Positions 22,963 to 48,600 of a stretch of 64,000 nucleotides of DNA are shown here, piece by piece. Numbering within the stretch: the first letter of the stretch is position 1; each line of letters starts with the position of its first letter. Origin of the DNA: Botryllus schlosseri. Its lineage: Eukaryota. The translations under genes and the position numbers were made by a program. A model generated the notes under the pieces. The model ran no database searches, had not been told where the DNA came from, and worked only from the letters and a program-made list of their open reading frames with translations. The stretch spans positions 13,454,001-13,518,000 of the forward strand of contig CM119378.1 in NCBI GenBank assembly GCA_051294905.1, given 5' to 3'.

Positions 22963-24680
22963 TTACTCTACTGTCGCGGTCATGTCGCCGGAAATCTCAC
23001 TGGGGTTTTCCCCGGTGCATGTGGAGCAATCAGCGCACGCGCAGTCGGTGATTGTGTCGTATTCGTATTCCTCCGATGTGCCGTCTTCGCAAGTCAGGAC
23101 GACAGCGCGGGTTTCCGTCTTGGTCGGATTGCATCGCGAACAACCGGCAGCAATGGCTCCTGCGTAATAGTCAACATACGGTAAAACTAGGCGATAGGTG
23201 GTGAAGTACTTGTACTTTTTCGAGTTACTCAAGTATAGGTTTTGCCAACTTGCACTACTTAGTCAAAGGATTGTGTCTTTAGAATACTCCCACTTCTACT
23301 TGAACAGTTTTTAGGAAAAACTAGACATTGGTTTGTACCAACCTTGCATTATTATGCGAGTGAAATTGTCATGAGAAGCCGCTGTAATTACAATAAATAA
23401 ATATCGTCGCTGTGGAATCAAAGTGGCATATGTTCACTTTTTTCAAATTTCGAGAAAATCAAGTTTGTTGCGAAATTTTCATTTTTTCGGACATATCTTG
23501 GTCACGGTTATGGTTTTCACATTGTTTCAAACTTAACCATGACCAAGATATAGTTAAAAACTTAATTCTTCCAAAATTTGTAAAATAGACATAAGGCACG
23601 ATGTGTTTTGACTGATTCCACTTCTACTGGAACACTTTTGAGGAATAATTACCTCTTACAATTTGGATTTTGAAAAGTAGAAAGTAGTGTCGATGTTGTA
23701 AGCTGGAAACTGGAAACACTTTTATGAGTGAATTGTCTTAAGAACCGCACGGAATGGCTGCTATACTATGGTAACTGAACATATTTTCAAATATTGCCCT
23801 ATTTACAGTGTCATTCGTCCTTTTGCATTACTCGCTAAGATAGATTCTGCAATTTCGAAAGTATCCAATACTGATCAAACCCGCGACCATGTCTACTTTT
23901 TGGAACTATTTAGAAAGACGAAAACATCAAGATGGCCGTTATCGTTATCGTCCTCGGGTTAGGGTAAGTTTTTGGGTTATACAGTCACATGCTGAAGTGA
24001 CGCATGCTGATGTGTTCCATGCTGAACTGTCGTTTTCCATTGTGTCGCATGCTCATATGTCGGGCAACCCTCTGTGGTCCGTGGACATATGAGCATGCGA
24101 CATTACAGCATGCGAGACTTCGGCATGCAACAATTTCGCATGCGACACATGAGCATGTGGGTTAAATTACGGGTTAGGGGTAGGTTAGGGTTGGATTTAT
24201 GGTTTGGTTAGGTTTAGGCTTTAGGTTAGGTTAGGCTAGGTTAGGTTAGGTTAGGCTATGTTTCGGGTTAGGGTAAGTTTTTGGGTTATACAGTCACATG
24301 CTGAAGTGACGCATGCTGATGTGTTCCATGCTGAACTGTCGTTTTCCATTGTGTCGTATGCTCATATGTCGGGCAACCTCTCTCTGTATCTCATACAGTC
24401 CGCATGCTGAACAATATACTAAAAGTCAATGAAGGGAGCGTGGCAGGCTCCTTTGCCTTTGTGAGTCCCGAATTTTCTCCCTGTCCACGCCTGCGACTAT
24501 ATAGCCTATAGCCTATATATATTACAGAGATTTTAAACGAACCGTTAACAGAAGTGGTGGTGACGGCGCAGTTTCCGCCGCAGGTGGCAGTCTTGACCAT
24601 GTCTGGAGACGAGCACAATTTTCCTCCGATGTTGATCTGGAAGAGCTGCTCCACTTCTTGCACCACGCAGCCTTCGATGT
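22963..24680 (-). CDS. Gene B C-terminal cystine knot (CTCK) and acidic tail
   Basis: Exons 24543-24680 and 22963-23186: CVVQE..LCSS..TCGGNC..GCSRCNPTKTE..TCEDG..DCACADCSTC-TGENPSEISGDMTATVE*. The CxGxC and CxC knot motifs are present. Confidence 0.9.
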
Positions 24681-27600: not shown

Positions 27601-30600
27601 TCATATTTGGAAACGGTCATTTCCAATCATGAAAGCGTGTTCGCTTGTGGCGGTATTGAACAATCTCTTACAAACTCTACGAAAATACTTACCGCAGAGT
27701 CCCATCATCTTGCCCTCGAGCGACTCGTAAGGAAGGGTCAGAATCAAAGACTGCATCCATTGTCTCGTTTTGTAGACAATCTCCATGTTGAGAGATCGGA
27801 TTTCGATTTTCAGCTGTTTGTAACCGAATTCCCTGACCGAGACGTCCTTATCCGCCGAGACCCACGGACTGCGGGCACCGATTTCTTCTCCATCCCTGAG
27901 GAACTAGACAAAGAATTTGTATAAACATATAGGATATCGAAACGACCATGTGTGGTATACCCATCTAACAACCACATAGGCCCCACGATATTATCAGTCA
28001 AGAGAAGACGGCAGAAAAATGCACTCAGATTTTATGCAATACCTTGAGTCCGAAAGTGAAGGTGTAGTTCACTTCTCTGTGAATGACGGACATCGTTTTC
28101 AGACAGGAGAGGGACTTCATTCTGGCGCTCTGCCATCTGCACAGTTCGTTGTCGATGATGACTTCGGTTTGGTTGAAACGATATTCCTTCATCAGCGTGT
28201 AGGTGCATTTTCCTTGGTAATCGTACGAGAATCCGTCGAATGTGGTGAAATGCGGGTCGCCGTACGCCTGGCACGTGCCTAGAAATTGGTAGCAGTCGTA
28301 TCTTAAGCGGCATCCAATGGAATAAATGAAAATTCAAATATTCAGTGGCTATTCATGACAAAACATTATCCATAAAATGGACTGACAATACATATGCTGT
28401 AATCACGGATCCTATGTAGCGATGTTTTTATCTATGCACAATACGAATTGTATTGGTATTTTTGCGCTATAATATGGATCAATTCATATTGAAAACCAGC
28501 AAGATCATAACATCATATTTATCATGATGTGACACATTAGTAGTAGGAATGAAACAACTGTATTTAGGAATTACTAACATCCAATTTTCGGTAGTAGATA
28601 TCAATGATTTACCATTCAATCCATTACATTGCCATATACGAGCGACTGGACAAACTTCTAAGGACCGATGTTTGGAATAAGATATTATCCTTTAACACTG
28701 CCCTTTCCATTGTAATTTTAGCTCAGTATTAGAGGAACATATAATTATCATACATGGGCAAACCCATTCTCTGCAGCATCCCTCCTTTGTAGACGCGAGG
28801 TACGGGCTTCCACCATTGACACAAATCGGCTTTTCACTCAGGCACGTGTATGTATCGTACTCCTCAATCCTGTACGAAGACTTCTTGGCGCTTGCATACG
28901 TGCACTGCAGCATTTTACAGTGGTTGTCCTTGTTAATCCACGAAACTCCAAGCTGTGGAAGATTTGACAAATCAAGTATGCGGCTTTTAATCTACACGAA
29001 AGATTTTGTACCTTGCGCGGGATGCCGTTGTAGTCGATGCATTGCATAGTCGAGTCATCAGGAATGCAGACGTATTCAGGACAGCAGCATTTCACGGCTG
29101 ATACGTTTCTGACGGCAATTTGGCCTAGCGGGCATGTGGGCTCGACGCATTTGGTGTAATTACATCCTGTGTAGAGACAAGATCACATGTAGAGATAACA
29201 TTGGTAACATTCTAAATATGTTTCTATAAATAATCATTTATAATTCTTACAATTACCCCTATGCCATAGAAATGATATCAAGTCAATTATATCAAATGGA
29301 TGAAGCCTGCTATGATACTATACTTGCTAGAAGTAAGTGATACAACCATATCAAAGGTCATGCATCTCACCATTAACCACAGATAAGCAGCAATAAGCAC
29401 TCAAATGATCAATGTTTTGTTTACAATGTGTTACGTAGGCTGGAATTCGTTTCTACGTGAAAAGGAATCATACTGAGTTGAAAGCATAAAAAATTACTTT
29501 GGAATAGATCTGAAAAGGAAATATTACAGCAATTCTGTCAACGGTATTACGGGTATATGTAGTGATGGTCAAATTCCATGTCTTTAATTAAATTTCTGAT
29601 TTTAATCCGTCGATCAGAAACATTGTCAATTTACATTCTTTTCAAATATGGGTGTCTAAATCCACCAATGTCACATGTGATGTGTTGTGTATGCAAGTAG
29701 TCATATCAGCAACGCCCTAACACGACATAATGAAAAAATTTCTATCTATTTCTGCTAACAAAACATTCAAAGTTTGTTGATTGAAATAATAAAATCAACT
29801 TACTGCATCCTTGTTGCTTACAGCATCTGTCGACGCTCATATCCATCCAGCTGTAGACATTCTTTTCTGGGTCTTCACACGTTGTAACCTTGGCCGGGCA
29901 CGGTGTGGGTCCTGCAACACAAGACACGCTAAGTACATATGCAAGCCTACAATTTCAACGGCGATACTTACGGCAGCCATAGATCGGACAACCGCAGTCG
30001 TCTTGATCGCCAGTGTCGTAGACTTCGTCACATTCATCCTCACAAGTCTTCTTCGGGCACGGGTTTCTCTCTGTAGTAATGGTATGGAGTTGTAGGTAGA
30101 TTTGTTGTGAGCGACATGACACATACTCTTTTAGCGAGTGCATAAATAGCTTTTATTCACCAGCAACACTTTGCACGTATTACCGATGATTACAGTTGAG
30201 AAAGTTTTTAAAGACAAAATACAAGTTAGCTCTCTTGTTCACCGGACCACAACCTGGATCTCGCCTTCCGACACATGCCACCTTTTTGTCACCTGTTCTT
30301 TTACTATTTATTCAGTGTGCATGCCTCCTTTCTTTACAGTGCCTCGGCCAGGTGGGTGTCTGATTTCGAAGACTACTCCAAGTCATTTCGACACCTTCCT
30401 ATCTTTCAGTGTATCGAAGTCTTGTGGTGTATTGAAATGATGAAATTTTTAGCAATCAATTGAATTTAATATTTCTGTACGTTATTTCTTATCAAGCGTA
30501 CAGAGAACCTTTCGTTTTTATTACTATATTTGTATGTCGAGGCAGCAGTTTGACTGCTTTACATAGTCGAGTTGTTTTGACTGCTTATTATTGCATCGAA

Positions 30601-33600
30601 ATTCTTTCGGTATTTCAAATTGATGAAATTCCTGATGATTCCGATTCTATGACATACATTTAGTCACATAAGATTGACTTGTATCTTTTTCGTCCCATAT
30701 AGAAGAAAAAGGGAAAAGAAAATTGTAATCACGGATACAAAATCGTTAGTATCCTACCGCACGTTCTTTGAAGGCAGTCACATTCATCTCGACTTTCAAC
30801 ACCGGTGAAACAAGCGTCACATTCTTTCGGTTCCGTGCAGATTGTCTTGTTGGCAATGTACGGGCATCCTTCATTGATCGCGGCGTCAACCAGGCAAGTT
30901 CTAGTGTAGCATTTGTCGGCGGGATGTTCCCACTTGATGTTACGGTCGTAAGTGCTGCCGGTTTCGGTCTCGAGACAGTCTTGCGGACATTCGCAGAATC
31001 CCGGGCAGCATTCGTCGCCGGACACTGCAGAGTCCATTTTCAAGACGGTTTTCGGCGTGATGCAGTCAGATGGCTCTGCGATGTCGCATGTGATCGGGTC
31101 TGCATAGCGAAAGAGGTGTGATTATTTTTCGTCGTTTTAATAATTTGATCGTTGCGATCACATCATCATTGTGAAGGTATAATTGATGAGGATATGTAGC
31201 ACAGAACTTGAAGATTGCTTTCGCCACGATATCCATTTCAAGAAGGTATTTATTATAACTCGAAGATTTTCGGGTACCTCTTATCAAGATATATCAGCAC
31301 ACTACAATAATAGCAATGCTTCAGGTAAAAACGACAGAAAAAAGCAAAGCAAAATAATGGGAAATTTTCAGCATTTCATCTTTCAAATAAAAATAAATAT
31401 GATAAACAATAATTACAGATCCAAAAAGTAATATATCAGAGATTCATCGAGATTCAAGACGGCGGGTTGTATATAACTGAAAAAAAATTAGCAACTTACC
31501 ACAAGAGACCACAGGGCATCCACAGGCTGTTTCAGTTGTGACCGCTTTTGTGCATTTCGGGCACGGATCTGGAATGGGACAGCCGATGTCTCTCGCGGCG
31601 GGGCAGAGCGACACATCCTGAGAGCACTGGTCGTAAATCAACGATGCCATCTTGGTGTCCTGAAGCATTTTCCTTGAGGAAAATTAGGAATATTTGAAAA
31701 ATATCAATACAGAAATACATATTATGAAAGATATCCAAGGTTAGAAATCTGTATTCTGCTTGAAATCCCTGCAGTGGTGATATAAGAGGTGGTTAAAATA
31801 GTCAGCCTTGCTACTTAAGTAGAAGTATAAGTACTGCCGTAAATTACCAGTGAATTTGGTTGTCGTTTGCATACTTTTGCCGGTTAATCGAAGATGGCTA
31901 CACCATACTTTTCCAAAGTGCAGAGTAGGTACTTTTGCATAAAAAAAATGTTCTAATAGAAGTAGAAGAAGTCTACAAACATAATCTCTTCAGCAAGTAG
32001 TGCAGGTAGGCAACACCTACTACCTAGTGGAGTACATTGAAAAAGTAGTAATACCTGTAGTCGATCTTGAGGCGAATTTCGTTCCACAGAGCAGCGTTGT
32101 CGATGTTCTTGAAGTCAACCGCCGTGATGTCATAACCCAATTGAGTCAGGACCGAGTCTGGCGGAGTGCACATCATTCGTTGACAGGCGTCATTGTCCAT
32201 CCATACAGAGAAAAGCTGGAAATAGTAAGATATTGGTCAAAGAACAGCAAGATATTTAATTTTAGAAATATAAAATCCTAAAGTCAAAATAAAGCTACAC
32301 GCTCACCTCTCTCTTGACTCCCTTGTAGTAGCATGAGTTGTCACACACTGTAAAAAGAGTTGGCAAAGATTAGATAGTTTGAAGAGCTTCCTGGAGGTAC
32401 AGAACTTCAACATACGATTGAATAGTATATTCATATTGAAATGAAACCGAATATTTTTTGCTATCACTTGTCAGTTGATGACGATTACCCCTGACGAGTG
32501 TCAGCCAAAAATATTGGGGTTCATTTCAATATGGATACACTATTCAAATGTATATCCGAGAGTTTGTTCAGTGTGATGTAAAAATCTTTATACAACACAA
32601 TTAAACCTACTTACCGCAACAGTTTTTCGAAGGGAAACAGTTGTTTTCGGTGGCCAAAGTCGTGATGATCTGGTTCTTTTCTGCGGCGGTACATTGGACA
32701 GGCTCCTTCAGCGGATCTGTTTCGGAAAAAACAACAATATTACCAATTACCAGACTTGGTCAGACCAGTCCGCATTCATACTTAAAGTAAAAGTAAATTC
32801 ATACTCAATTACAAGTAGAGTGGAAATAAGAAATGAAGGTCTTGAAGGTACTCAAGTGTGTAGTTTCAAAAAGTATATTTAGCCAACGGGACCCATAACT
32901 TAACTCGTTAAATGGAGGTGTCTAATTTCTGAAATTGCATGGTGCATTTTCGTGACTGACGCAAAATGATTATGACACTGCAAATGGGTATGGGCGCAAT
33001 TATAGAAATTTGTTCAGTTGTTGTGATACAGGGACTATGTTGCCAAGTCGTTATTACAATTTCACTCCTAAAAGTAATGCGAATACATCCCAAGTACTAC
33101 TGTTTACTTTACAACGTACAAAGCGTAAAAAGAATGTCGTTTTTCCTGAAATAACAGTAAAGTAGATGTGGAAATAGTCAAAAAACTTAGTGCCTTAAGT
33201 AAGTATTGTCAGTACCACCTCAATTACGCAACCACATTTATTACTAGCTTCCACGTGTTTAAACACAGAGTATATAAAAGGTACACTGGTATATAACAGT
33301 TTCCACTTACTGCAAGCGACCGAATCGCAGCCGCACGTGTCAGGCACGATTGTCTTGTTGGTGCACGCCGGGCAGGCTTCCTCCAGGTCGTTTTTACACG
33401 CGTTACGTTCGACAGGTGTGGGGCACACGCCGTTGGCAAAGTCTTCTTCCGAAACGAAGCATTCGAAAAGCTTGCAAGGAGCGGTCCATTGAGTACCGTT
33501 CTAAACAAGCAAAATTAAATGAGACTTTTTTATTGATTGGAGTTGGCAGCGAAACCTACCGGGACTCTGGTACCGTCTTCCTTAACGCAAACCAGGTCGG

Positions 33601-36600
33601 CTTTGCAACCGTAGACGTTACAGCATTGTTCGACAGAGGCGTCTCTCTTGATGGCAAGATATTCGCTACAAAAGAAACGCACATTAAGCGACATTGGCAA
33701 AGCCTGCTTGAGAACTCCAAAGAAGTAGAATTACTTTGTTCATGACCAAATCTGGGTACAATCATTACACTTGGCGTGGGCCGAGCACTCAAAACTTCAG
33801 GAAATATTATCAGCACAGCTGCATGAAATTTACTGTGGACTGATTGTACTCTGGGTTGAGCACTGAGCACTAAATCAAAGTTTTGCCAACATACATACAA
33901 TCGTACATGCATAAAAAGTAAATTAGTACCAAATAAACTCCTCTCCATAAAAAATTAGGCATACTTGGCGACTATTGCTTTTACTGAGACTTACACATAG
34001 CAATCAGTGCATGGTTCTTTCGTGTCGTTGCAAGGCGTCGGCGTATCGACGATCTTCTTACATTTTTTGGGATCGGACTCATCAGTGGCGTTAGTGCACA
34101 CGTAGTCGATGCAGTTCTTGGACCATTTCTCTCCAGGCGAACGCGCGACACCGTCCATCATACAAACGACGCATTCTGATCGAATGAAGTAAACAGTATA
34201 CAATACAATGTCCACAGGAGGCTATGCGGCTATTTAAGAAATTGAAATCCTTATTTACCGCAGTTGTATTGCGGGCAGCATCTGTCTCCCATGCAACAGC
34301 TACGTTCTTCGTCTTTGACAGGAACACTGTTTTCTGGGCATTCTGGGCTTTCGATGCACTCAGGGGTTGTCTTTGTGACATTGTAGCATTCCTTCTCCAT
34401 GCCCGGTTCCTGCAAATATCAAACGCATAGGTACAGAAACACAAAAAAAGTATTCTAATAATCGGAGGCTAACGAAGTACTTCTTTTTTGAGAGAAGTTA
34501 AGTAGGTTTTGAAAAAAACATTTTTTAAAGCAAACTACTGACTTTTACACTCTGGATTTTGAAAACCACAAATTATTTTTAGGATATGTTGTCATCGGTT
34601 TTCGGTCGCCATGCATTATGTGAAGATATTAACCAATTCCCAAGAAACACCTGAAAAGACTTAGTGATTCGCACGGAAACCACGCTGTCATACTCTCGTA
34701 TTGCATGAATATACACGCGTCATGAAATTGATATACATTGGAATTTATATCTGGCTAAATAAAGACTGTTACGTTGGAGCTGTTACAACGAAACCTTGTG
34801 TGCGTGGTCTGTGTGTCTACAAGATAGGCTGTCACGTGTCACGTTTAAGTAATATATGGGAATGAGGACAGGCCGTCACAGGAAATATATACGCAGGGAA
34901 GTACGCAACGCAACCTTCTGGAGTCAGATTAGACATCAATAACATCACATTAACATTCGCTCTGCGTTATGCTCACCACAATCACTTGCCACACAAAACT
35001 TGGTTACTCATAAAAGGCTACTAGAATATTTGGACCACCAATATCTGCGTAAGTAGCAAATGTCATCCTGAATGGTAATATCATTCTTGTCACAATACTC
35101 CAGTAATTTTGTTTCTACCTTGTCCGATTTGCAGTAGTATTCATCGTAGCATCCTCTTTCGACATCGCCTTCAGTCCATCTGTCTCCTCTCGATCGGCTA
35201 GTCAGGATTTTTCCGTTGTACATACAGGTCGTGCATTCTGTATGGAAATATCGATAATGATGCTACCTTAATTGACTCACAATTGAATCTATCGCAGACT
35301 AGGTTCAGATAAGCCTACATCCTACATCAAATCAAACTACAGACACCAAATGTTTACAGAGGTATTCAGTAACGAAGTGCTGCTACTTTTTACAGTACTG
35401 AAGCATGTGTTGCCTACCTACCTACTCGAGTTTTAAGACTACTTCTGCTTAACAGTTTTTGAAGGAAAACTAACAACCGAGTGAACTACCATTTGCCTTA
35501 TCTTCAACTATGTCTGAGAGTATCACATGTTGAGTACCAAGATAAAGCGTGCCATGTCTTGGAAATCACTGGTTCTACCTGAAATCGTGTGAAAATTACT
35601 TTGACCTCCAACGAACGTTTGATATGTGGAGTTGTAGGGTGAAGCCTTTCATGTCTCGGAAATTGTTTCTTCGATTCAAAATCATGTGGAAATTTACAAC
35701 ATTACCGCTACTTATACTTAGAAAGCAATGCTAACTGCTTTAACCACTTCCGAGAGCATAACACGTTGAGTAGCATGGCGAATCCTACCGCACGAAAGCA
35801 GCTTTTTGCATCCGCACGGGTCTGTTCCATACACGGCTTTGTCGTACGGCGTCGAGCAGTTGGCGACAGCCGGGCAAGGATCGTCTTGGCAAGATTCTTT
35901 CAAGCATCCGTCGACGTCGATGTCGTTGGTACAGACGCAAGTCTGGCATTTCCTCGGCGTGGGCACTGTTCTTTGCCACTTCTCAGCAGGCTACGAAAAA
36001 AGGGGGTCAGAGTAGTCATCATTGGCAGGGTTGTAAAGACTCGAGTCATTCAGCATGACTCAATCAAGTCATATGAATTGACACATTCTATATGACTTAT
36101 TCAAATCTCGTATATCAGGACCAATAATTGACAAATAAACCCAGTCTTTTTTATGTTTGAATAAAGATTTTAGATTGAGAAAAATGAGAATATTATGAAT
36201 TTGAGATCTTTGATACCAACCAACAGTTTAACAGAAGTGAGTTAAACCTGACTTGAACTCGACAATGAACAGTGAACACTACAACTTAGACTAGGACTCA
36301 TGTCTTAACACTATGACTCGGACTCGCTGGTGAATTGAAAATGACTCGACTTGACTCTAGTCAAACGTATTGTCACGAGTCAAATTGACATGTGACTCGA
36401 AGCCTTGTGACTTGGCTACAATGTTCTTCATTAGTACTCAAGTAGTATTGTGATAACATCATAAATTTATACTTGAGTACAAGTAGATGTATCGATTTCC
36501 AAGTAAGTGAATGAGTTCTGGGTTTAGTGTTGCTCAAAAAAGAAAACTGTCAAGTAGAAGTTGAAGTAGCCATAGCCTCTTGAGAAACTAGTGCAAGTAT

Positions 36601-39600
36601 TGCAAAAATAATCGTATCCGATCGACCGGATATTTTACCTCGTAAGTGGAGTTAGTCAAGTCGTCGACGCAGGCGTGATTGCATGTGCATTCGTAGCAAG
36701 GCTTCTTGCATTCGTCGGCGTCGGCAATTTCCGTGGCTCGGTACGGGAAAGCGCATGTCACAGGTTCGCATCGTTCGATCTTGGCTGTAGTAAGAAAAAG
36801 CGGTTGTGGTAATGACCAGAGGACGACCAATATTAGAATTTCATGCCAATATGATATATTTTTGCCGAAAAAGCCAATATTAATATTAATTTCATTTATT
36901 TAGAATGATACCCCAGATGAGCAAGAGACTATAATGTAGATCAAAAAACACATTTTTCCAGTATTTTATCCAAACGTTGAAATGAAAAATTCAATATTCG
37001 AAATATTGATGGTGTTGTTGGACAATACTGATATATTGGCACGACTCTCCGATACATCGGTCAGCCTTTCATAAAGATTTATGTAGATGAATTGTAGGAA
37101 TTAAAATTTAAGATCAGAAATCTAGATTCGGCTTAGTAGGGTCAGATTTAAATACATTGATAATGTGATTGGACAAGCCAATAAAATTTTCAGGCTGCTA
37201 TCGACCGAATTTAAGTCTCAACCGGATACAGCGTACATCTGAATGAGATCGTAATTCAGTTTGAGAATTGGATTCAGACCACATAGCAGGAAGCGGATTT
37301 GAAAATGTTAAACTCACATATCTCCATGGCTGGGAATTTTTTTTTAATTTCCGAATTTACTATCATTTGATCGGTTCATAAATACTTACTGCATTCGGCT
37401 ACATCACACCCGCATTCGTCTTGAGTAATGGTTCTCGTGTAGCAATCTTCACACTCTGCCGGTTTTTCGCACGACATTTCGTACACGACAGGACACAGAG
37501 TACCGGCCTGCGCACACTCGTTTGTGAGAGTCTGCGGAATCTTCATGGAATTCAAGAGATTCCTGCCAGAATGGAGATGATCTGTTTTTATTCCTGAATT
37601 TTAGCAATCAAAACAAGATAGGTCTTCCGGTTTTCAACACAATTACGTTCCCAAAAGAGGGAGTAAGGAAATTGATTTCCTTGTATAATAACCAGAATAC
37701 TACTACTTCTCTGAGAACTGATGTTGCTATGATTTTAGACTAATACTACTTCTAAACAGTTTTCAGCTTTTTTTGTTACTTGAAAATTGCTAGTTCTACA
37801 TGTACTTCAGTATAAATTTATTAGTATATTTCGACTTCTACTCAAGCACTATCAATGATTACTTTGACCACTTAAGGCTTTGAATAAGTTTTATTCAGTA
37901 TCCTTAAATCTACAAATAATATAATAATATCACCATGAAATCAGCCAAAAAAGTATAGAAAAACTATACACATTGGACTGAGGATATTATTTCACATAAA
38001 TATTTAATTTATTTGGACGTCAAACTTTACCACTCCTCAATAGTTTTGCAAAAAGAATAAATGTATCTTACTTGAAGTTGGCGGATCCACGAATTTGCGT
38101 GAACTTGGATTGGACGGCCATAGTCGTCAAGTCGTTAATGTCCAGACCAGCATCGAAGCCCAGAGTGGTGACGGTTTCGTTGGGAAGCACGCACCGGAAT
38201 CGTTGGCAAGATTTTTCGCTCGTCCACATCTCGTAAAGCTGATATTGTTTGCCTTCGTATGTGCACGTCGGTTCGCACACTGTTTGAAATGGAAATATGG
38301 TTGACATGTGCGGTATGTGAAACTTCAGAAGTAATTTTAATGCATATGTGACACATTTTTTGACTAAAATCAACACTACCACGGTGATTTTTCATCTAAC
38401 ACTCGATGTACTTGATCATACTAACCGCAGCAGTTTCTGTACGGGAAGCACGAGTCTCCAGTTTCCATCAATTCGATGACTTGGTTGTCGGCGGGCTCGT
38501 TGCAAGATGTCGGCACTGGTCGGGGTGCTGTGAAATTGGAAAAATAAAACATTAGGATATGATCAACATGTCAGATCCGGGATACATTGAGTGTCTTTAT
38601 CTCTTAAAATATAATAATCAAACTAACAGAGGTTTTCAGTCATCAAAACTACATACAAGCTCAATAACGTCACTTCTTTTATCGAACGTTTTCCTCTCTT
38701 GGATCGTAAGAATCAAACGAACAGTAGTTTTGCGTAATCAAAACTTCATACAAGTCCAATAAAGTCAGTTATTCATCGAGCGTTTTCCTCTCATGGACAG
38801 CAAGAATCAAACTAACAACAGTATTGAGCAATCAAAACTTCATACAAGCTCACTGGAGTCAGTTTAATCTGAGTTGTTTGTTATATGGGATAGGAAGAAA
38901 TATTTTTACAGATAAATAGAAATACATCTTGTCACAGTTGTTATCACACAACATTCTTGTATCACATTCACGCTAGCCATTACAGAGCGCATATTATACA
39001 ATCCACCATAAAGAAGCTTACTGCAAGTAATAACCGGGCATCCGCACGCGTCCACGGATTCCTTGGTGATTTCGCATTCCTTGCATTCGGTCGGTTTCGG
39101 GCAACCGATATCTCTTGTGACTGGACAGAGGGCCGGGTCTTGGCTGCATTCCGAATAAAGCGTTTTTGCGACGCCGGAATCTCTCATCATCTTCCTGTTG
39201 GGGGCGAAAAAGAGGCATGTCAAAAATGGCGGGAATTGAACGATGCTGTATGGGACTGAATGGATCTATCAGCATAGGCAATGGTGGTTAAAGTAGTCAG
39301 TGTTGCTACTCAAGTAGAATTAGAAGTAATGCCATAAATTCCCACTCAATTTCAAAGAGAAGTGGCCTGTCAAAACTATTCCAACCAGAAGCAGAAAATG
39401 AAAGATCAAGGAATGATTGACGTAAGTATTTGCAAAAAGTAAATATGGCCGAGGGGTTGCAACTTTCAACAGTTAATAGGTGACCAACAACTAGCCACCG
39501 TAGAACTCCAGCACACAACTAGAATCAAGAAAACGATGTACTATTCGGATTCCTGTGCTTAAATTGTCATCCCAAGCTTTAATTATAATCATCGTTCAAT

Positions 39601-42600
39601 AAATATATGATAGATTGGTCAATACAGTCGGTTACAAATAAGCCTGTGTTTGAACACAAACAAGGCGACTGCATGATTCTAGAGACGTGTTTGATTTCAT
39701 CTCTATCACAATTTTGAAATTTCGTTAAATTTGCAACAGTTTGATATCTCAGCTTTCGGGGCTCACAGAAACTCAACATTTTTTGGGCTTATCAAACGGA
39801 CCGGGCATACTTGCCTGTAGCTCAGTTGGTTCACGATCTTTCCTGAAGTTACGAAATCTTCCAAGTCGTCAAAATCAACTTCGCTCTCATCCATTCCGAT
39901 GGCGGTGAGGGTGGCAGCCGGGATCACGCATCTCATTCTCTGGCAAGTCGACTTATCCCACCAGACAGAGAGTAGCTAATGCAACGAATAACGTGAGTTA
40001 TCGTATTTTTAACAAGAAGTCGACGTGCTTACCTCTTTTCTTTGTCCTTTGTATGTGCAAGCGTTGTCGCACACTGAAGCACAGAAAAACATTACGATAC
40101 GAAAAGGGCAAAAGCATGAAAATACAGCAGGTATGAATATTTACTCACGTGGTTATGTTTTTACACATCTTCCACCTCCAGTATTTTAGGAAAAAAAACA
40201 CTTACTTTTACACTTTTGAAATTTACAGTATTAGAATAGTTTTCTGATAAGTTACACCACTTCTATGAGCAAAAAATGTCATAAAAGCATACGAGATAGC
40301 CCCTGTATTGTGGTACCTGAATATAATTTCAAGGATTGTACCTATTTGCAGTGTCGTTAGTAATCATGCATTAGTCGCAATTGCAATTTTGAAAATAGCC
40401 ACCCCCCGAATAACTGCTAAATTACAGGCTACTCTTTTAAACTACTTAATCGAGTAGCTTTAAGACTTCATTTTCTAGTCCCACTTTATGTATATACGAC
40501 AGGTTCGGAAAATAGCAACTGTACTTGTAATTGAGTGGAAATTTATAGCATTACTTCTGCCTGAGCATCAAAACAGCATGTCCATGTCCTGACTAATCAA
40601 TTCTAAATGAAAGGTAAATACAAAAATATCTCACCGCAGCAATTCTTGCTCGGGAAGCATTCGTCGTCGGTGTTGAAATAGTCAATAATCTGTCCTGTGG
40701 CAGGGCTGGCGCACATGGTCGGATCATTATTCGGCGCTGACAACAATATGATATTACACCTCACACGATATTACGATTCAAAAAGCAGTACTTACGACAT
40801 TCGACTTTATCGCAGTCGCACTCATCTTTGACAACGGTCGCATTGGTGCATTTTCTACACACGGTGGGGTCGGGATCGCAGTGGTCGATTGTCTGCCAAT
40901 CCGGGCACACGCCGTTGTCCCAATCTTCGTCGGAAACTTTGCACACGAGTCGGGTGCATTTTTTCGGTTCCCAGATGGTTCCGACCTTGAAATAAAGTAA
41001 AATTTTAAATAAGTTAGGGCTAAATTACAGAGATGAATGTAGGCTAAATTATAATATACTGCAATTCCTAAGCAGTCAATTGTATACTGGCAGAGGTGGT
41101 CAGTAACAAACTACTTCTACTCGTAATTAAGTAGAAATAAAGGCATTACTTCTATGTCTGCTTGAGTAGCAATGCTGATTACTTTGACCCTTTAAGACGG
41201 ATGCCTAAGTTTACCAGTTATTACAACATGCAGTATTGCATCAACTGCTAATCTATAGTGCTAATTGAGAATCCGTAAGAAGTAAGCGTAAGGGATTATC
41301 GAACTCACCTCGGCCTTGGTTCCGTCGTCCTTGTAGCAATATTTCTCTGGCTGGCAGTCGTAGACTTCGCAGCACTGGTCGGGAATGCTGATTGGAGTTT
41401 TGAGGTAGGATCTGCATAAAGTAACTCAACTAATTATCGGAGATTTAAATAGAATCATTTTGTTTCATATTTTATGGCGGTATTGAAGATTGTGATCAAG
41501 TGGGAACAGGAATCCAAGCACTGAAATCTGAGTCCAGCATTAATTACTTTCAGCAAAGCAATGCGGATGCATTTGTAATGGCATACAGGAAAAAGCGGGG
41601 GGGGGGGATCAAAACAGTGCCTTAATACTGATGCATTGAATACAGTGTCATGCGGCAATTTAGATTTACTGGTACCAGCAACCAGGAAATATAGCGAGTG
41701 TCATTCAAAATAGCAAGATACTCAAAATAGTTAGTTAGAATTTGGCTTATCTTGTGTTAGGGTTTGAGGTTAGTTCAGCCTGTTACAGTGAGTCAGTTGT
41801 ATCGACAAATGATGAAATCCAGAACACCCTGAAATGTTATCATTAAGTTACTTATAAAGCCATCAATCTTGACACATTTTCTGTCTACCTACTTACAAAT
41901 TCTAGCTTATCATAATTTTTCAAAGGATCAGGTCATTAATCAATTGCATTTACACCAGACTCCACTCTAACGCTAATGCTAGACTTGTAATTTATTCCGA
42001 CCGGCATTATGTATCATCAATCCTTACTTGTAACAGTTGGAGCATTCCGGCTTGGTGGTGTTGCACTTGTAATCGGACGACGTGATAAGCTTGCAGTTCT
42101 GATAGTCGCTAGCATCTGGTTCATCCGTGCACACGTAATCGACGCAGTTCGCGGTCCATTTCTCGCCTGGATTCTTGAAGGTACCGTCGTCCAAACGGCA
42201 TTTGACGCATTCTAAATTTTAGTGTAATTGTGAATGAGCGGCACTCCAAAATAAGCACGGCCTACGCACTGCAATCGTATCTTGGGCAGCATTTGTCTTC
42301 AAAGCAGCAACTCCTGTTGTCGTTCTTCACGGCGACTTGATGCGCTTCACATTCTGGGTCTGTGGGACAGTCTGGCACTTGTTTCGTCACGTTGAAACAT
42401 TCCAGAGTTTTGGCCGGATCCTGTACGAGGAAAATCACGATTGCAAACTAGCATTTGTCGAGCTGAATATTAGAACAGCAAACATATGTTATCAATGTCC
42501 ACTACAAATCTAATCCATTTAATCTTCCATATCAGGATGACAAACATATGAGACCGAAATACGATTACTCATTCAGAGAGTAGATAGACATAACCGAGAC

Positions 42601-45600
42601 AGATTGACACTAATTACTAGTTCTGTATTAATTAAAGCGACTGGATACCCACGTAAATACACTGCCCTAATGGGAATGGTTCAGATGTCATTTGCTTCGC
42701 TACATTTTAAAAGTCAATTGCTGATTTCGGAAAGTGGAGTGTTTAAGACTCATATATCAGATCAAAACTTAGAGAGAACAGCAGCTTCAAATGTAGACTT
42801 GGTCAATTTGTGGCATACTTTTAACACTTAACCGCTTGTACAGGGTTTACACCTGAGTATATAGCTATGACAGCAGCGTATAGATTGTGAAGACACAATG
42901 CCCTCTATACGGGTCGCCTATATCTTTAGTATCACTTATAAATTGTCAGGCAGAGGTGCCAGCGTGCAACAATTTGTGACAATACAGTGTCCAGTTCCTC
43001 TGTAGTATGCGCTATCACTTGTAAATTATCAGGCAGAGATGGCAGTGTACGACAATTAGTGATAAAACAGTTTCCAATTCTTCCGTCCTATGTAGCTACC
43101 TTTCAGGCGTAGCTCACACACAGCTTTCAACCAGTAATTATCACTAATTACTATCCAATCAAGCTAATCAAAGCTTAATACAACCAAATACTCGCAATAG
43201 AGCAGTGGTTCCCAACCGGGGGGGGGGGGAATTTTGAAGTTTTTTGGGGAGAATCTGGCTCAATTTTTTGATGGGGAATGTGGCTTTGGCAATGTATCGG
43301 AAGATACACTGGGTTCACAAGGTTTTTAGATTTTTATGGTATAGAACTGTTAAGTAGAAATTAGTTTTTTACAATTGTATGTTTGTTTGGCGGATTTCAA
43401 GCTTGGTGTATGTGTAAATGCCTTCCGTAGATATTACATCCCCTGATAAAGTGAGGCTCAGGAGACGATTTCGTTGGGTCCGCGACAGCCTATCGATCAA
43501 ATTGCTACTAAGCAGGAAAACGTCAAGCCGAATTCAGCACAAGGCCGCTAGTGAAAATGTTTAACTTTTGACAACATATGAGTTAACGTGAAAAACATAC
43601 CAAATTCATCGATTCAACTCAAGTCCATAGCAAGCGGACTTGGTGGTTTATTTTTCGTCAGCGGCAACCCGACCGGTCAAAAACAGGTCAAATTTGACTG
43701 TACTTAACCAAAGTTTAGTGCGGTCCGCATTCGCCATCGTTCAGACATATCTGAATATGTATGTTTGGCCATTAATTGCTCAGTCGACAAATGGTTGCGC
43801 GTTAAAAAGCACATTTTTTTAGTCACAGGCAACTTTTTCATAGGGGGCAATTTTAGCTCAAATATCGGACAAGGGGGGCACGAGACGAAAAAGGTTGGGA
43901 ACCACTGCAATAGAGGAATCACACTGTTGTCGAAGCTTCTTTTGTCAAATATTTTCTATTTAGCAGTTTTTCAGACACTTTTATTCGCATTAATTTACAG
44001 TATTTTGTTCAAAGTAGTCACTGAAGTACGAAGATTGGAAGTGAACTAAAGTATCCGAACTATAGACTCCCTTTGATCGAAGAGGCTGGAAAATTTTTGA
44101 CAGAAATACCGATATATGAAGAAGATTACCAGACTATCAGGTATATACCGTCTTGTTCATGAGATCTCTAGTATCGATGGAAATAAAAACCTGACAGTGT
44201 TTAAACCGGTAGTTTGAAAGTGAAACCAACACCAGCCAACAGTGATGACTACCTTAGCTGGGTCACAATAGTAAGAAGCAAAGCATCCTTTCGTAGTGTC
44301 TCCTTCAGTCCATCTTTCACCTGATTTTCTATCAGGGACGACCTCACCGTTGAACATACATTGTGTACATTCTGAAATAATAAGTGAAATCCATTATTCC
44401 GCAACTATACCGTTTGGACATTTGCTCCATACCACAGGACACGAGGACTTGACATCCGCATTCGTCATATCGGTAGACTGGTTTGTTGTATGGCTCCACG
44501 CATGGCTCCGGATCGGGACACACAAATGGTGCGCATTCCTGTGCAAAAGAATGCAATGAAATTATTACAAATCATAGGGCACATTCACAAACTACAGGTC
44601 ATTTTCGTCAGTTCTTTTGCAGTTAAGGATCAGAAGTGATTTGAGCCGTATTATCGCAATTAACTTGGCATTAAAGACAAGATATGAAAAAATATCCGAG
44701 GCGTAACTGGCAGTATGGTTGCTCAGTAAAATTAGTAAATAGTAAATCAGGACCAAAGTGTGAATCCATTTAAAACAGTGGTTCCCAACCTTTTTCGACT
44801 CATCTCCCCCTTTTCAAGCTCAACACCGATCATCGCCCCCCTAATTTTGTGAACCGAAAAATGGGCATACAAACTGTAATCACCGGCGACTAAAAAAAAA
44901 AGTCAACTTTTCGGCTCGATGTCGAATTTTACACTTTTGCAACTAAATTTCAGTGGATTGACTAAAAAATAAAAAATAAAAAGGTCATTTATCTGATTTG
45001 ACTCCAATAGAGCCGTTTTAACGTGTCATCGCCCCTTCGCTATTTTCGCCCCCTTTGTCCATTTTCGCCTCCCTATCACCCCTTCATGATTTTCGCCCCC
45101 CTAGACCACCAAATCGCCGACTTTGGGAACCACTGATTTAAAAGGAAAGATAGATCGCACCCTGTGACGAATCCCTAGTACAGCGCATTGGAAATTTTTA
45201 TCGATCCTCGCTTAAACTGAGGTTCTACTCCCACACATATCACTATATTTTGATATAGTCCCTTCCAAGTTATTGCATACATCTTGCAACATTGAATGCT
45301 TCTACAAAAGGACACAAAATAGAGACCTCTTTCTTGCACTGATCTTTCTCATCGACGTCCTTGGTGCAGTTGCAAACTTCGCATTTGCTGGGTTCCGTGT
45401 AAATTCTCTTCCACGATTTTCCGACCTGGAAAAATTTCACAGACCATAAAAATCTGTTCGCGATTCACATCTATTCGGTCATACGTTGTATGTGGCGTTG
45501 TCGAAGTTGTCATAACACCAATCGCAAGTACAGTCAAAGCACGGCGCTTTGCACGGGTCTGCGTCTTCAATCTCGTAACGCTGGTGTCCAGGTGGACACT

Positions 45601-48600
45601 TCAGATCTGCATTGCATCTCTCGACTTTCACTGTGAAACAAAAGTAGTACACACGTTAAGCTACATTTAAAAAGTCATTGCTAATTTGGGAAATTGGAGT
45701 GCTCATGAGTCGTATATCAGATCGAAACTAGGACCATAATATGTGTCAGAGAATGTCAGAGCAGTGAGCCTTGCTAGATTTGGTCAATGGGGCGCATACT
45801 TTCAGCAGTTAATCAGACATGGCTACTTATATATTACGGTACGCACAAATAGGTGCAATTTTCAACAAAATATTCAGTTGTCGTGATACAGGGCTCTTTT
45901 GCCTGGTTGTCATGATAATATTACCAATAAAATTGATGCAAGCATATCCCAAAACGAATGTTTACACTGCAAAATTCAAAGTGCAAAAAGTATGTAGTGG
46001 AATTGATAGCAGTCTAAAATGTAGCCACTTTGGTTTTAAATAAAAGTATAAATACTTTGTTACTGACCACTTATGCTAAATGTCTTACCGCATTCAGCCA
46101 CGTCACAGCCACAAGCGTCCTGGGTGACGACGGTGTCATAACATTCGGGGCATACATCGACGGGCTTGCAGCCAATGTCCATTGCGGCAGGGCACAAGGA
46201 GATGTTTTGCTGGCACGTGCTGTACAAGTCTTGGGCGATCTTTGAGTCGACGATCATGCCCCTGTCGCGAAAACAGACTGACGATGTGGAGGGGAATGCG
46301 ACCACAAGCAGGATGGTGGGACTGGGGAGTAAAAATAACCCAACCCACTATCTAGTATCTACACATTGCAATAGCATCATTTTTTCTAATATTACCGAAT
46401 GATGGCTTTAAAAAAGTATGTAAATATAAAGTAATAATCATCACCATGAATCCACATAAAAGATTTGGCAGACTCTGATACCGCTTAAGCATTGCATCAT
46501 TGTGTATATATTTACCTGAAGTCCACCGAGGATTTGAAATCGCTGAAAACCGATTCGATATCGGTGTTTTCGAGCTCGTTGTAAGCGATACGTCCCGCGT
46601 ATCCGAGCTTGCGAAGAGTGGCTTCCGGAAGGACACATCGCATGCGAGTGCACGTTTCTTCGTCTTGCCATACTTCGAAAAGCTGTGTGTAGTCGGGCAG
46701 GGTTAAAAGCGCTCACATCGGATGTTATGATGGATTTAGAATTACTAACCTGGCGTTTCACTCCTTTGTATGTGCACGAAGTTTCACAGACTGAAATAAA
46801 GATTGAAGTTTAGGCACATCGGAATGACTTGGCTCATGATAACCCAGGTACATATGCATACAATGTAGTAGGGGTCAAAACAGACTTGCTTATGCAGTAA
46901 AGGGATACGATTGTTGATATACGATGTTCTTTTGAATTCTCTACAATTTGCTGACGATTCCCCTGATTAGTGTTAGCCGAAAATATTCAGGTTGATTTCA
47001 ATATGATTTTACTATTCAATTGTATATTGAAGCTCTGTACCTCCAAGAAGCTGTTTGAAGTGAATTAAAGTGAATTGGAGACTAAACTTCTTTGAGACAT
47101 AAAATCAGACTGGAGTCAGTTCATGGTGACAGAGCTGTATGGGACTTACCAACTACGATCAAATTTGATATTTTTAGGTATAAGAATCTATCGATGATTT
47201 GACGATAAACAAAATTAGTCGGAGAAGGGCATACTAGTAACGAAGTGATTGCTGTGGAATCTACTAATGCTTATCATAAAACTGAATCCTGTGCTGAACT
47301 GCTACAATAAATATGGAACTAACGGCACAATTCATACTCACCACAGCAGTCTTTGCTTGGGAAGCAAATATCTTCAGTCTCCAGTGTTGTAATTCTCTGG
47401 TTGACACCCGTTTCCACACAGCTTGTCGGCGGTTCCAATGGCTCTGCAATAACGGAAGACTTGCATTTCCAAGCACATCGAAGTCTCAAAGCATTACACC
47501 TACCGCAGTTCACAACTGGGCAGCCACATTCGTCGAGCGATTCGATGGTCTTTTCACAAAGAGCGCATTCGATGGGTTTCGGACAGCCCATTTCGAATGT
47601 GGTGGGACACAGCGAAATGTCTTGGTTGCATTCGGAATACAGAGATCGGGTGATTTTGGAGTCGCTCAGCATTTTTCTGAAATGGCGTATTCATAGTTGA
47701 TGCCCTTATATTGACTCTACAGCAGGGGTTCTTAACCGGGAGTCCATGAAATGTTGAAACTCAAACTATAATGCTATATAGTCAGTAATAATGACTTATA
47801 TTATTACTGCTCACCACTGGTAACAATCCCCACAAGGATGATATATACACTAATTTGCTCTCCAACTGCTAATCAGGCCATGACGAGGTCTGCGCGGAAG
47901 CGATGACGCTTTTCTTCTTAGCCATCACAATCTCAAATTTTGTGGATCAGGATCCATGTAACCACTCCAGTGTGAGGCTACAAATAGCTAAATAAGAACT
48001 CGAAAGAGTATGGTCGTAAAAGAAAAGCTACTTACCATTTAAAAAAATCATATTTAAGGGTTGGAATGTAAACATGATGGTGGTTAAGTCCATAGCGAAA
48101 GAAATTCTTACACCCTTTGTGCCCAGTTTTTCTACCGACTCTCATCAGGAGCGAATATCAGTAAATGCACGAAACTACACTTGAAATCAATGACTGAATA
48201 CCTGTAATTGAGCTTGGTCATGATATCACGGAAAGTACTGCTATCATCCAGATCGAAATAGTCAATGTCTTTCGGATTATATCCGAGCACGGTCAGTGTT
48301 TGTTCGGGGAGAACGCAACGCAGTCTCTGACAGGTGCTGGTATCTGTCCACACCGAAAAGAGCTAAAAGTACCCGTAATTAGTGTGGAAAGTATATTTTT
48401 GTTTTTTTTATTATGACTCTACCTCTTGTCTGGCGTTTCCAGAATAGCAGGCACTGTCGCACACTGGAAAGAAAATATACGGAATAGAATCTGTGCAAGG
48501 GGTAAGAATGGGAAAATAGAGTGTACCCACCGCAGCAATTTTTGCTCGGAAAGCAACTGTCACCAGTGTTGAAGTAGTCCACAATTTGATTTTCGGCTGG

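What the first reader, a model, noticed from the sequence alone, without database searches (positions are those of the whole stretch)
31500..48362. Five copies of an unusual VWC variant carrying a conserved Cys-free insertion of about 40 aa
Seen: in ordinary modules the segment between two particular Cys is about 11 aa (IVTEEDWAQGI). In five modules it is 53-55 aa: VLPEQTLTVLGYNPKDIDYFDLDDSSTFRDIMTKLNYRKMLSDSKITRSLYSE; VLPEATLRKLGYAGRIAYNELENTDIESVFSDFKSSVDFRGMIVDSKIAQDLYST; VIPAATLTAIGMDESEVDFDDLEDFVTSGKIVNQLSYRKMMRDSGVAKTLYSE; VLPNETVTTLGFDAGLDINDLTTMAVQSKFTQIRGSANFKNLLNSMKIPQTLTNE; TPPDSVLTQLGYDITAVDFKNIDNAALWNEIRLKIDYRKMLQDTKMASLIYDQ. The consensus P..TL..LG[YF]..acidic..[YF]R.M..DS.I...LY is kept despite strong divergence. 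Inference: a small amphipathic helical subdomain I do not recognise, spaced regularly along the filament. It could serve as a lateral cross-linking node, a Ca2+ site or a force-unfolding element.
Basis: partly seen in the sequence, partly recalled or inferred. Interest (0 to 1): 0.75.

Follow-up and report, generated by a model that had tools for sequence, protein, structure and literature searches.

The report
Lineage-specific insert in VWC-like modules
Five cysteine-rich modules of a sea-squirt von Willebrand-factor-like gene carry a real, transcribed and conserved cysteine-free insert of about 42 extra residues that matches no known domain. It is a narrow-lineage variant of a known module, and its fold and function remain unproven.

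Summary
On the minus strand, five modules (J1-J5) have 53-55 residues between two cysteines where ordinary modules of the same gene have 8-11. Spliced transcript contigs from two studies join the 161/167-nt exons exactly as predicted, all with GT..AG. The insert cannot be skipped in frame.

All copies descend from one ancestral module. They sit as J-K-J pairs in a super-repeat of about 8 kb. The genome holds exactly 10 copies, all in three tandem paralogs.

The insert is under purifying selection: dN/dS is about 0.2 against an orthologous exon of another species.

No known family matches it. Pfam, PDB sequences and an exhaustive profile search of 1.84 billion proteins found only two short fragments from the same or a close species.

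The fold is unresolved, because the insert is split by an intron and no spliced sequence could be folded. A low-confidence half-module model and the hydrophobic periodicity suggest two or three short helices.

Verdict: a new variant of a known module. Cross-linking, Ca2+ binding and force-sensing roles are untested. Another window of this scan also listed this stretch.

The parts
48423..48463 (-). J1 exon e0 (41 nt; CxxxC start of the module)
   Evidence: Joints 48362>48423 and 48463>48531 in spliced contigs of runs X1 and X2. Splice sites.
48202..48362 (-). J1 exon e1 (161 nt). It encodes W..C-x4-C and then the first 38 residues of the insert (48314-48202).
   Evidence: Joint 47676>48202, GT..AG on the minus strand, in X1 and X2. 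Translation.
47504..47676 (-). J1 exon e2 (173 nt). It encodes the last 15 residues of the insert (47676-47631) and then the 8-Cys C-terminal half.
   Evidence: Joints 47676>48202 and 47443>47504. Translation.
47342..47443 (-). K exon (102 nt, 34 aa, 4 Cys), the spacer module between J1 and J2. Like exons lie at 48531-48632, about 40630-40734, about 38424-38525 and about 32610-32717.
   Evidence: Joints. Peptides.
46750..46790 (-). J2 exon e0 (41 nt)
   Evidence: Joints 46682>46750 and 46790>47342.
46516..46682 (-). J2 exon e1 (167 nt), carrying the longer 55-residue form of the insert
   Evidence: Joint 46260>46515 (cut +1) in X1 and X2..
46089..46261 (-). J2 exon e2 (173 nt)
   Evidence: Joints 45630>46089 and 46260>46515.
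40033..40073 (-). J3 exon e0 (41 nt)
   Evidence: Inferred from homology and splice sites. No reads were laid here.
39815..39975 (-). J3 exon e1 (161 nt), with a GC donor (CAG|gcaagt)
   Evidence: Inferred from homology with J1; no reads were laid here.
39022..39194 (-). J3 exon e2 (173 nt)
38072..38279 (-). J4 fused exon e0+e1 (208 nt; the intron between them is lost)
   Evidence: Database fragment P0001 is 95% identical to it.
37390..37562 (-). J4 exon e2 (173 nt)
32307..32347 (-). J5 exon e0 (41 nt)
32055..32215 (-). J5 exon e1 (161 nt)
   Evidence: An orthologous 161-nt exon with the same splice sites lies in contigs L011 and L012 of another species.
31500..31672 (-). J5 exon e2 (173 nt)
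30756..31103 (-). K-like plus 'T' module in one exon. T is a J-like module without the insert (9-residue loop LVDAAINEG). It was used as the foldable stand-in.
   Evidence: AF2 model. Fold matches.
49298..49492 (-). Ordinary I module with the 11-residue loop IVTEEDWAQGI. Sister copies lie at 40791-40985 and 33306-33500.
   Evidence: Exon end 49303.
22966..62379 (-). Host gene, a VWF- or mucin-type polymer protein. VWD at 59292-59035. C8 at 57533-57300. An array of VWC-like modules in three super-repeats. VWD at 28333-28028. C8+TIL at 26378-25905. Cystine knot at 23262-22966.
   Evidence: Pfam hits. Module map.

Best explanation
Shown:
- The five segments are genuine, constitutively spliced coding sequence of a secreted VWF-like polymer gene of a sea squirt.
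- They are one evolutionary invention. In one module type (J), the loop that follows the C-x4-C pair grew from about 10 to 53-55 residues.
- That module was then copied by tandem duplication. First came a J-K-J pair, then the whole super-repeat of about 8 kb, then the gene, giving three tandem paralogs and 10 copies.
- The insert has been kept under purifying selection.

Inferred:
- The loop corresponds to the loop after Cys4 of VWF C-domain numbering.
- The insert forms a small compact knob, largely of short helices: P-x-x-T-L-x-x-L-G-Y, then an acidic connector, then F-x-x-I-x-x-x-L, then D-S-K-I-x-x-x-L-Y.
- The knob loops out of the end of subdomain 1 of a VWF-C-type module.
- Disulfides of the module bridge across it. 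It therefore hangs beside the chain, does not carry tension, and offers a conserved acidic and hydrophobic surface.

Most likely role (inference only): a non-covalent contact site on the rod of C-like modules, for self-association or packing of the polymer or for a partner protein.
For: Real and expressed:
- Spliced contigs in runs X1 and X2, from two studies, join e0-e1-e2 of J1 and J2 with GT..AG on the minus strand.
- Their depth equals that of neighbouring exons, and no skipping joints were seen.
- e1 (161/167 nt) and e1+e2 (334/340 nt) are not multiples of 3, so the insert cannot be skipped in frame.

Single origin and duplication:
- Module order B-C-D-E-F-G-H-I-K-J-K-J is repeated.
- A profile search of the whole genome finds exactly 10 copies, all within 135 kb of contig 8.
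- The paralog gene has the same order.

Selection:
- Between the within-gene copies, synonymous sites are saturated (pS 0.64-0.91), while pN in the insert is 0.35-0.53.
- J5 against the orthologous exon of another species: dN 0.21, dS 1.05, ratio 0.20.
- J2 against its paralog: 8.5 of 91 non-synonymous sites differ, against 19.5 of 26 synonymous sites.
- Of six transcript polymorphisms in the insert, four are synonymous. The other two are V>A and I>V.

Folded rather than disordered:
- The insert is 38-45% hydrophobic and has 3-5 Pro+Gly.
- Hydrophobic columns are conserved at i, i+4, i+8.
- AF2 of the e0+e1 half places helices at 37-42 and 57-69.

Loop-out topology:
- The insert-free sister module T is modelled with strands 66-72 and 81-87 flanking the 9-residue loop.
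- VWF C4 has the same C2-x4-C4 spacing, and a 2-8 disulfide tying SD1's second hairpin to SD2 (10.1101/2022.08.20.504523).
Against: - No confident structure exists. Both AF2 models are poor, with mean pLDDT of 54.7 and 51.3.
- The whole insert was never folded, because its two exons could not be joined in any tool.
- The co-fold of the two halves gave no answer.
- Chou-Fasman averaging and the strand-like alternation around [LIV]x[YF][RK] do not favour a purely helical unit.
- Disulfide pairing in this 12-Cys module is unknown, so tension shielding rests on analogy with VWF C4.
- Pfam VWC does not recognise any exon.
- Nothing bears on a binding partner, tissue or function.
- The raw RNA runs X19 and X23 show no expression.
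Confidence: 0.5

Rival explanations
1. The insert is a flexible, acidic spacer or hinge with no fixed fold. It lengthens the link between the two subdomains of the module, or decouples them, and is conserved only in composition and a few anchor residues.
For: - AF2 confidence over the insert is only 56-61.
- The middle (acidic) part varies in length by 3-6 residues and in sequence between copies.
- Chou-Fasman propensities are flat.
- No fold library matches.
Against: - dN/dS is about 0.2 and hydrophobic positions are conserved across copies whose synonymous sites are saturated.
- Hydrophobic content is 38-45%, with little Pro or Gly and no low-complexity runs.
- Low pLDDT is expected anyway for half a module with 11 sequences.
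Confidence: 0.25
2. The acidic centre of the insert ([IVL]-D-[FY]-x-[DN]-[LI]-[DE]-[DN]) is a Ca2+ site. It would help condense or pack the polymer in secretory granules, or stiffen it outside the cell. This could coexist with the main explanation.
For: - Net charge is -1 to -6, with 5-10 Asp+Glu per insert.
- The first Asp and the later Glu/Asp-Asn/Asp pair recur in most copies.
- From general knowledge, Ca2+ and pH control the packing of VWF and mucins.
Against: - There is no canonical EF-hand, TSP3 or cbEGF motif.
- The acidic positions are not invariant: J4 has LDINDLTTM and J2 has IAYNELENT.
- No Pfam Ca-binding family matches.
- Ordinary 11-residue loops of sister modules are just as acidic (IVTEEDWAQGI, TDKPDENDPDN). 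Acidity may simply be inherited.
Confidence: 0.12
3. The insert is a force-unfolding (sacrificial length) element in series with the chain. It would give the filament extensibility.
For: It is a Cys-free stretch of about 55 residues inside an otherwise disulfide-locked rod.
Against: - The insert starts one residue after a Cys and ends directly before another. In sister modules those two Cys are only 8-11 residues apart, in what the model shows as two neighbouring strands.
- In VWF C4 the 2-8 disulfide spans this region, and the loops are described as topologically protected from mechanical unfolding.
- Tension would therefore bypass the insert, if the pairing is conserved.
Confidence: 0.05
4. 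The insert is a known three-helix UBA-like unit (helix-LGY-helix), acquired by exon shuffling.
For: - Pfam RuvA_C, a UBA-like fold, touches 14 residues (QALNALGYNSKDVD) of one paralog copy at E 0.21.
- The L-x-x-L-G-Y motif after a short helix resembles such folds (own knowledge).
Against: - The match is non-significant, covers 14 residues and hits one of nine copies.
- No other place in the genome resembles the insert, so no donor exists.
- The insert is not a symmetric cassette exon but is split by a phase-2 intron.
- The AF2 half-model shows no three-helix bundle.
Confidence: 0.05
5. The segments are not part of the mature message, being retained intron or mis-joined ORFs.
For: None found.
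Against: - Spliced contigs from two studies include them with canonical junctions.
- The frame is kept across all five modules.
- Selection is purifying.
Confidence: 0.01

Closest known systems
VWF C domains / VWC (chordin-like cysteine-rich) modules, in particular VWF C4 (PDB 6FWN)
   Same: - N-terminal C...G..Y..G..W motif in several module types.
- The C2-x4-C4 spacing also seen in VWF C4 (ASPENPCLINECVR), followed by a loop and a 'CP'.
- Tandem arrays between D assemblies and a cystine knot.
   Different: - Pfam VWC does not hit any exon.
- The C-terminal half has 7-8 Cys (CP-x6-8-C-x5-6-C-x2-C-x9-C-x-C-x4-C), not the C7...C8C9xxC10 ending.
- None of the solved VWC structures that matched the model was found to have a 53-55-residue Cys-free loop at this place. 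VWF C4 has about 15 residues there (own recollection of the sequence, not tested).
RGD hairpin of VWF C4
   Same: It is a precedent for a VWC subdomain-1 hairpin presenting a binding motif while disulfides shield it from tension.
   Different: The RGD sits on the first hairpin and is a tripeptide. Here a whole unit of about 55 residues sits after the second hairpin, and no binding motif is known.
Ciona CiVWFL genes (KY.Chr1.1785, KY.Chr10.1161), endostyle-specific VWF-like genes
   Same: They are sea-squirt VWF-like secreted proteins. Such genes mark the protein-secreting endostyle zones 2 and 4 in Ciona (PMC8462739; PMC13635237).
   Different: - Orthology to this gene was not tested; PMC13635237 calls the orthology between Ciona and Botryllus VWF genes unclear.
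- The profile of the insert found no long annotated protein in 1.84 billion representatives. An insert this similar is therefore not in the proteins held there.
- The tissue of expression of this gene is unknown.
Gel-forming mucins / VWF polymer family (VWD-C8-TIL assemblies plus CTCK)
   Same: The host gene has VWD, C8 and TIL upstream and downstream of the array, and a C-terminal cystine knot.
   Different: I saw no PTS or VWA region in the window. The long middle part is made only of VWC-like and small Cys modules.

Membership tests
VWC / VWF C domain (Pfam PF00093 and relatives) | Sequence match to the family profile | tested here: not met
   hmmscan against Pfam found no VWC family at E <= 1-10. 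It was run on J exons, I exons and the complete one-exon T module. J itself could only be tested exon by exon.
VWC / VWF C domain (Pfam PF00093 and relatives) | Ten-Cys pattern C1..C2xxC3xC4..C5..C6P..C7..C8C9xxC10 | tested here: not met
   - Read directly: C-x3-C...W..C-x4-C-[loop]-C-x6-CP-x6-C-x5-C-x2-C-x9-C-x-C-x4-C, which is 12 Cys.
- The C2-x4-C4 form without C3 does occur in VWF C4.
- The C-terminal half differs from the canonical pattern.
VWC / VWF C domain (Pfam PF00093 and relatives) | Two-subdomain fold (FN1-like SD1 plus SD2) | tested here: inconclusive
   - The model of the insert-free T module has pLDDT 52-71 over the module.
- Foldseek's best match is CCN3 VWC at E 0.073.
VWF / gel-forming mucin polymer proteins | VWD-C8-TIL assemblies | tested here: met
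   - VWD at 59292-59035 (E 8.6e-9) and at 28333-28028 (E 6.1e-14).
- C8 at 57533-57300 (E 1e-16) and at 26378-25905 (E 4e-7).
- TIL matches are weak, at E 0.004-0.012.
VWF / gel-forming mucin polymer proteins | C-terminal cystine knot for dimerisation | tested here: met
   For 23262-22966, DAN scores E 3.8e-6, above its cut-off. Cys_knot scores E 0.0012.
UBA-like three-helix domains (e.g. RuvA_C, PF07499) | Profile match over the roughly 45-residue domain | tested here: not met
   Only 14 residues of one copy matched, at E 0.21 and 12.6 bits against a cut-off of 24. Eight other copies gave nothing.
EF-hand or other canonical Ca2+-binding motifs | Recognisable Ca2+-loop motif or profile match | tested here: not met
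   No Pfam family matched. Acidic positions are not invariant in the alignments.
Ciona CiVWFL endostyle genes | Orthology and endostyle-specific expression | not testable with these tools
   - No Ciona sequence or tissue label was available.
- Run identities are coded.
- Protein searches returned no annotated tunicate protein.

The most novel reading that the evidence does not exclude
The insert is a newly evolved, autonomously folding mini-domain of about 55 residues with no relative elsewhere. It was born inside a hairpin loop of a VWC-like module in one ascidian lineage, perhaps by extension of exon ends into an intron that sat in that loop. E/F-type modules of the same gene carry an intron in the equivalent loop. 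As paired knobs on a VWF-like filament, it would set lateral contacts of a secreted net or gel, for example the feeding mucus filter.
Probability: 0.15. Interest if true: 0.65.

Novelty: new variant of a known kind. Interest (0 to 1): 0.35.

Why it matters
VWC and VWF-C modules are usually seen as small, rigid, disulfide-locked beads. Their hairpin tips carry short binding motifs, such as RGD in VWF C4 or the BMP-binding surfaces in chordin-type repeats.

Here one such loop has been expanded five-fold into a conserved, cysteine-free unit. That unit has been kept through at least three rounds of duplication. If it folds on its own, it would be a clean example of a young domain arising inside an old one. 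It would also be a handle on how an invertebrate-chordate VWF-like polymer makes contacts beyond its covalent end-to-end links.

The practical reach is modest. The unit is confined to three neighbouring genes of one sea-squirt lineage, and nothing yet links it to a tissue, a partner or a material property.

Tried and rejected
- Folding the whole insert was not possible.
- AF2 on the J4 e0+e1 half (alignment A2, 11 sequences) gave pLDDT 54.7. That is too low for a fold search.
- Co-folding the two exon halves as two chains (complex prediction) gave 'no answer' (score 0.01). It is not evidence either way.
- AF2 on the insert-free one-exon sister module (A7) gave pLDDT 51.3 overall and 52-71 over the module. 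I used it only for a cautious fold comparison.
- Protein searches found nothing beyond P0001 and P0002. These were the profile of exon 1 against 1.84 billion representatives, the J4 exon and alignment A2 against 5.8 billion proteins, and the T exon. P0003 and P0004 are low-complexity repeats, not relatives.
- The ESM Atlas feature search of the insert gave no usable hit.
- PDB sequence searches with profiles of both exon halves gave only chance hits: zinc fingers and enzymes at E >= 0.06.
- The RuvA_C (UBA-like) lead could not be followed further. No RuvA alignment could be fetched, because the control genomes give no loci. I rejected it as evidence.
- Hydrophobic-moment and Chou-Fasman profiles were indecisive between helix and strand for the middle of the insert.
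- A search for a donor of the insert elsewhere in the genome, with an insert-only profile, found nothing outside the 10 copies.
- The raw RNA-seq runs X19 and X23 showed no reads on the exons, only on intronic repeats. They say nothing on splicing.
- MAFFT placed K exons against the C-terminal part of the module. I dropped them from the folding alignment.

Full report
**What is there**

The finding lies in a multi-exon gene on the minus strand. Stop-free, Cys-rich segments run from about 62,400 down to 22,966. Pfam finds these parts:
- VWD at 59292-59035 and C8 at 57533-57300, upstream of the array.
- VWD at 28333-28028, C8+TIL at 26378-25905 and a cystine knot at 23262-22966, downstream.

Between them lies an array of small Cys-rich modules with no PTS or VWA region that I could see. 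Other notes of this scan call the genome a sea squirt; I did not test that. A second, paralogous gene starts near 13,386 and runs off the window.

**The observation**

All five quoted peptides are present. Each 'J' module is built from:
- e0, 41 nt.
- e1, 161 nt in J1, J3 and J5, and 167 nt in J2 and J4.
- e2, 173 nt.

J4 has lost the e0/e1 intron. Modules are phase 1-1 and 375 or 381 nt long.

The insert begins one residue after the second Cys of a C-x4-C pair and ends directly before the next Cys. It is split 38 + 15 by a phase-2 intron.

**Is it expressed?**

Contigs of runs X1 and X2 come from two studies and are spliced. They join 48423-48463, 48202-48362, 47504-47676, 47342-47443, 46750-46790, 46516-46682 and 46089-46261. 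Every joint is GT..AG on the minus strand. Word depth is about 7-10, the same as neighbouring exons, and there are no skipping joints.

Neither e1 nor e1+e2 is a multiple of three, so the insert cannot be an in-frame cassette. J3-J5 rest on homology.

Two raw RNA-seq runs showed no reads on the exons. Expression is thus sample-specific.

**Origin and spread**

The module order is B-C-D-E-F-G-H-I-K-J-K-J, repeated. The insert modules sit as pairs J1-K-J2 and J3-K-J4, plus a single J5. The e1-to-e1 periods are 8,387, 8,441 and 7,760 bp.

Profile searches of the whole 495-Mb assembly find exactly ten copies, all within 135 kb on contig 8:
- five in this gene;
- three in the neighbouring gene;
- two in a third, truncated and very recent copy.

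J1 pairs with the paralog's first copy (61% identity), J2 with its second and J5 with its third. The 'five copies' are thus descendants of one ancestral module. Their spacing is a by-product of duplication.

An insert-only profile finds no donor elsewhere in the genome.

**Selection**

Between the within-gene copies, synonymous sites are saturated (pS 0.64-0.91). The insert has pN 0.35-0.53, against 0.25-0.44 for the Cys frame.

Two contigs from ENA metagenome assemblies (L011, L012) carry an orthologous J5 e1. The exon has the same 161-nt length and the same splice sites, while the introns cannot be aligned, so it comes from another species. Against it, the insert part has dN 0.21 and dS 1.05, a ratio of 0.20.

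J2 against its paralog differs at 8.5 of 91 non-synonymous sites and at 19.5 of 26 synonymous sites.

Of six transcript polymorphisms inside the insert, four are synonymous and two are conservative.

**Is it known?**

- Pfam gives nothing for any copy, apart from a 14-residue touch of RuvA_C at E 0.21 in one paralog.
- Profiles of both exon halves hit only chance sequences in the PDB.
- The ESM Atlas gives nothing.
- An exhaustive HMM search of 1.84 billion representative proteins finds just two real hits. P0001 is 95% identical to the J4 exon. P0002 is the other-species J5 exon.
- Two word-indexed searches of 5.8 billion proteins return the same two.

No annotated long protein in those collections carries a recognisable copy. 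Absence from other tunicates is still not shown, because no tunicate genome could be searched.

**Fold**

This is the weak point. The insert spans an intron and no spliced sequence could be given to the tools.
- The J4 e0+e1 half folds at pLDDT 54.7. It shows strands in the N-terminal part and helices at 37-42 and 57-69, which are insert positions about 4-9 and 24-36.
- Conserved hydrophobic columns at 30/34/38 and at 43-44/49/53 fit helices.
- The stretch around [LIV]x[YF][RK] alternates like a strand, and Chou-Fasman averaging is flat.
- Composition speaks against disorder: 38-45% hydrophobic and few Pro or Gly.
- The two-chain co-fold gave no answer.

**Where the insert sits**

I folded the one-exon, insert-free sister module T (30756-31103). 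Its pLDDT is 52-71 over the module, and strands 66-72 and 81-87 flank the 9-residue loop.

Its matches are coherent though weak:

VWF C4 also has the C2-x4-C4 spacing, an RGD on the first SD1 hairpin, and a 2-8 disulfide linking the second hairpin to SD2. Its loops are described as topologically protected from force (10.1101/2022.08.20.504523).

By analogy, the insert is a loop-out at the end of SD1 inside a disulfide-closed loop. That argues against a force-unfolding role. This is inference: the pairing of the 12 Cys here is unknown.

**Mechanism and comparison**

I commit to a compact, partly helical knob that presents an acidic and hydrophobic surface for non-covalent contacts of the polymer. 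I put the descriptive core at about 0.9, the fold at about 0.5 and the role at about 0.3.

The rivals are a flexible spacer (0.25), a Ca2+ site (0.12, and compatible with the main reading), a force element (0.05), a UBA-like acquisition (0.05) and an artefact (0.01).

The nearest known things are VWF-C4-type VWC modules and the endostyle-specific CiVWFL genes of Ciona (PMC8462739; PMC13635237). Orthology and tissue of expression are untested.

**Verdict**

It is a new variant of a known module, of moderate interest. The same stretch was also listed from another window of this scan.

Noticed in passing
window 1-13386 (-) and G000:C8:13,366,000-13,454,000: There are three tandem VWF-like paralogs. 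Gene 2 has two super-repeats and three J modules. Gene 3 is a truncated, very recent copy whose J2 exon is identical to gene 2's (L004 = L005, 72.6 kb apart).
   Followed up: partly
window 44253-44264 and 42409-42420 (-): The exon pair E'/F' encodes DPAK|DPAK across a phase-0 intron. That intron lies in the same Cys-Cys loop where J modules carry their insert. It suggests a possible route, extension of exon ends into an intron, for the insert's origin.
   Followed up: no
window 39807-39814 (-): J3 exon e1 appears to use a GC donor (CAG|gcaagt) instead of GT. No reads were laid on it.
   Followed up: no
window 38072-38279 (-): J4 has lost the 60-nt intron between e0 and e1, giving a 208-nt fused exon. 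A near-identical ORF fragment (P0001) exists in a Logan assembly.
   Followed up: partly
window 44776-44888 and 47010-47055: Short intronic repeats draw high depth in all four runs, up to about 300 word depth in the contig runs. The raw RNA-seq reads fit them only partly. They are probably a dispersed, transcribed repeat.
   Followed up: no
window 47444-47503 (-): Many introns here are about 60 nt. This one is stop-free and in frame, so plain ORF finding fuses J1 e2 with the next K exon into a false 117-123-aa ORF.
   Followed up: yes
window 24361-24254 and 24052-23948 (-): Two copies of a stretch of about 33 aa (AYDTMENDSSAWNTSACVTSACDCITQKLTLTR) lie between the C8/TIL exons and the cystine knot. 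Whether it is exon or intronic duplicate is not known.
   Followed up: no
L011:150-364: In the other-species ortholog of J5, the e0 exon seems 6 nt longer and lacks the first Cys of the CxxxC pair (reading VNVPIEHCYSKSNKIY). That would change the Cys count of the module. The splice sites are inferred only.
   Followed up: no
window 7426-7568: A run of 143 N (gap or masked).
   Followed up: no
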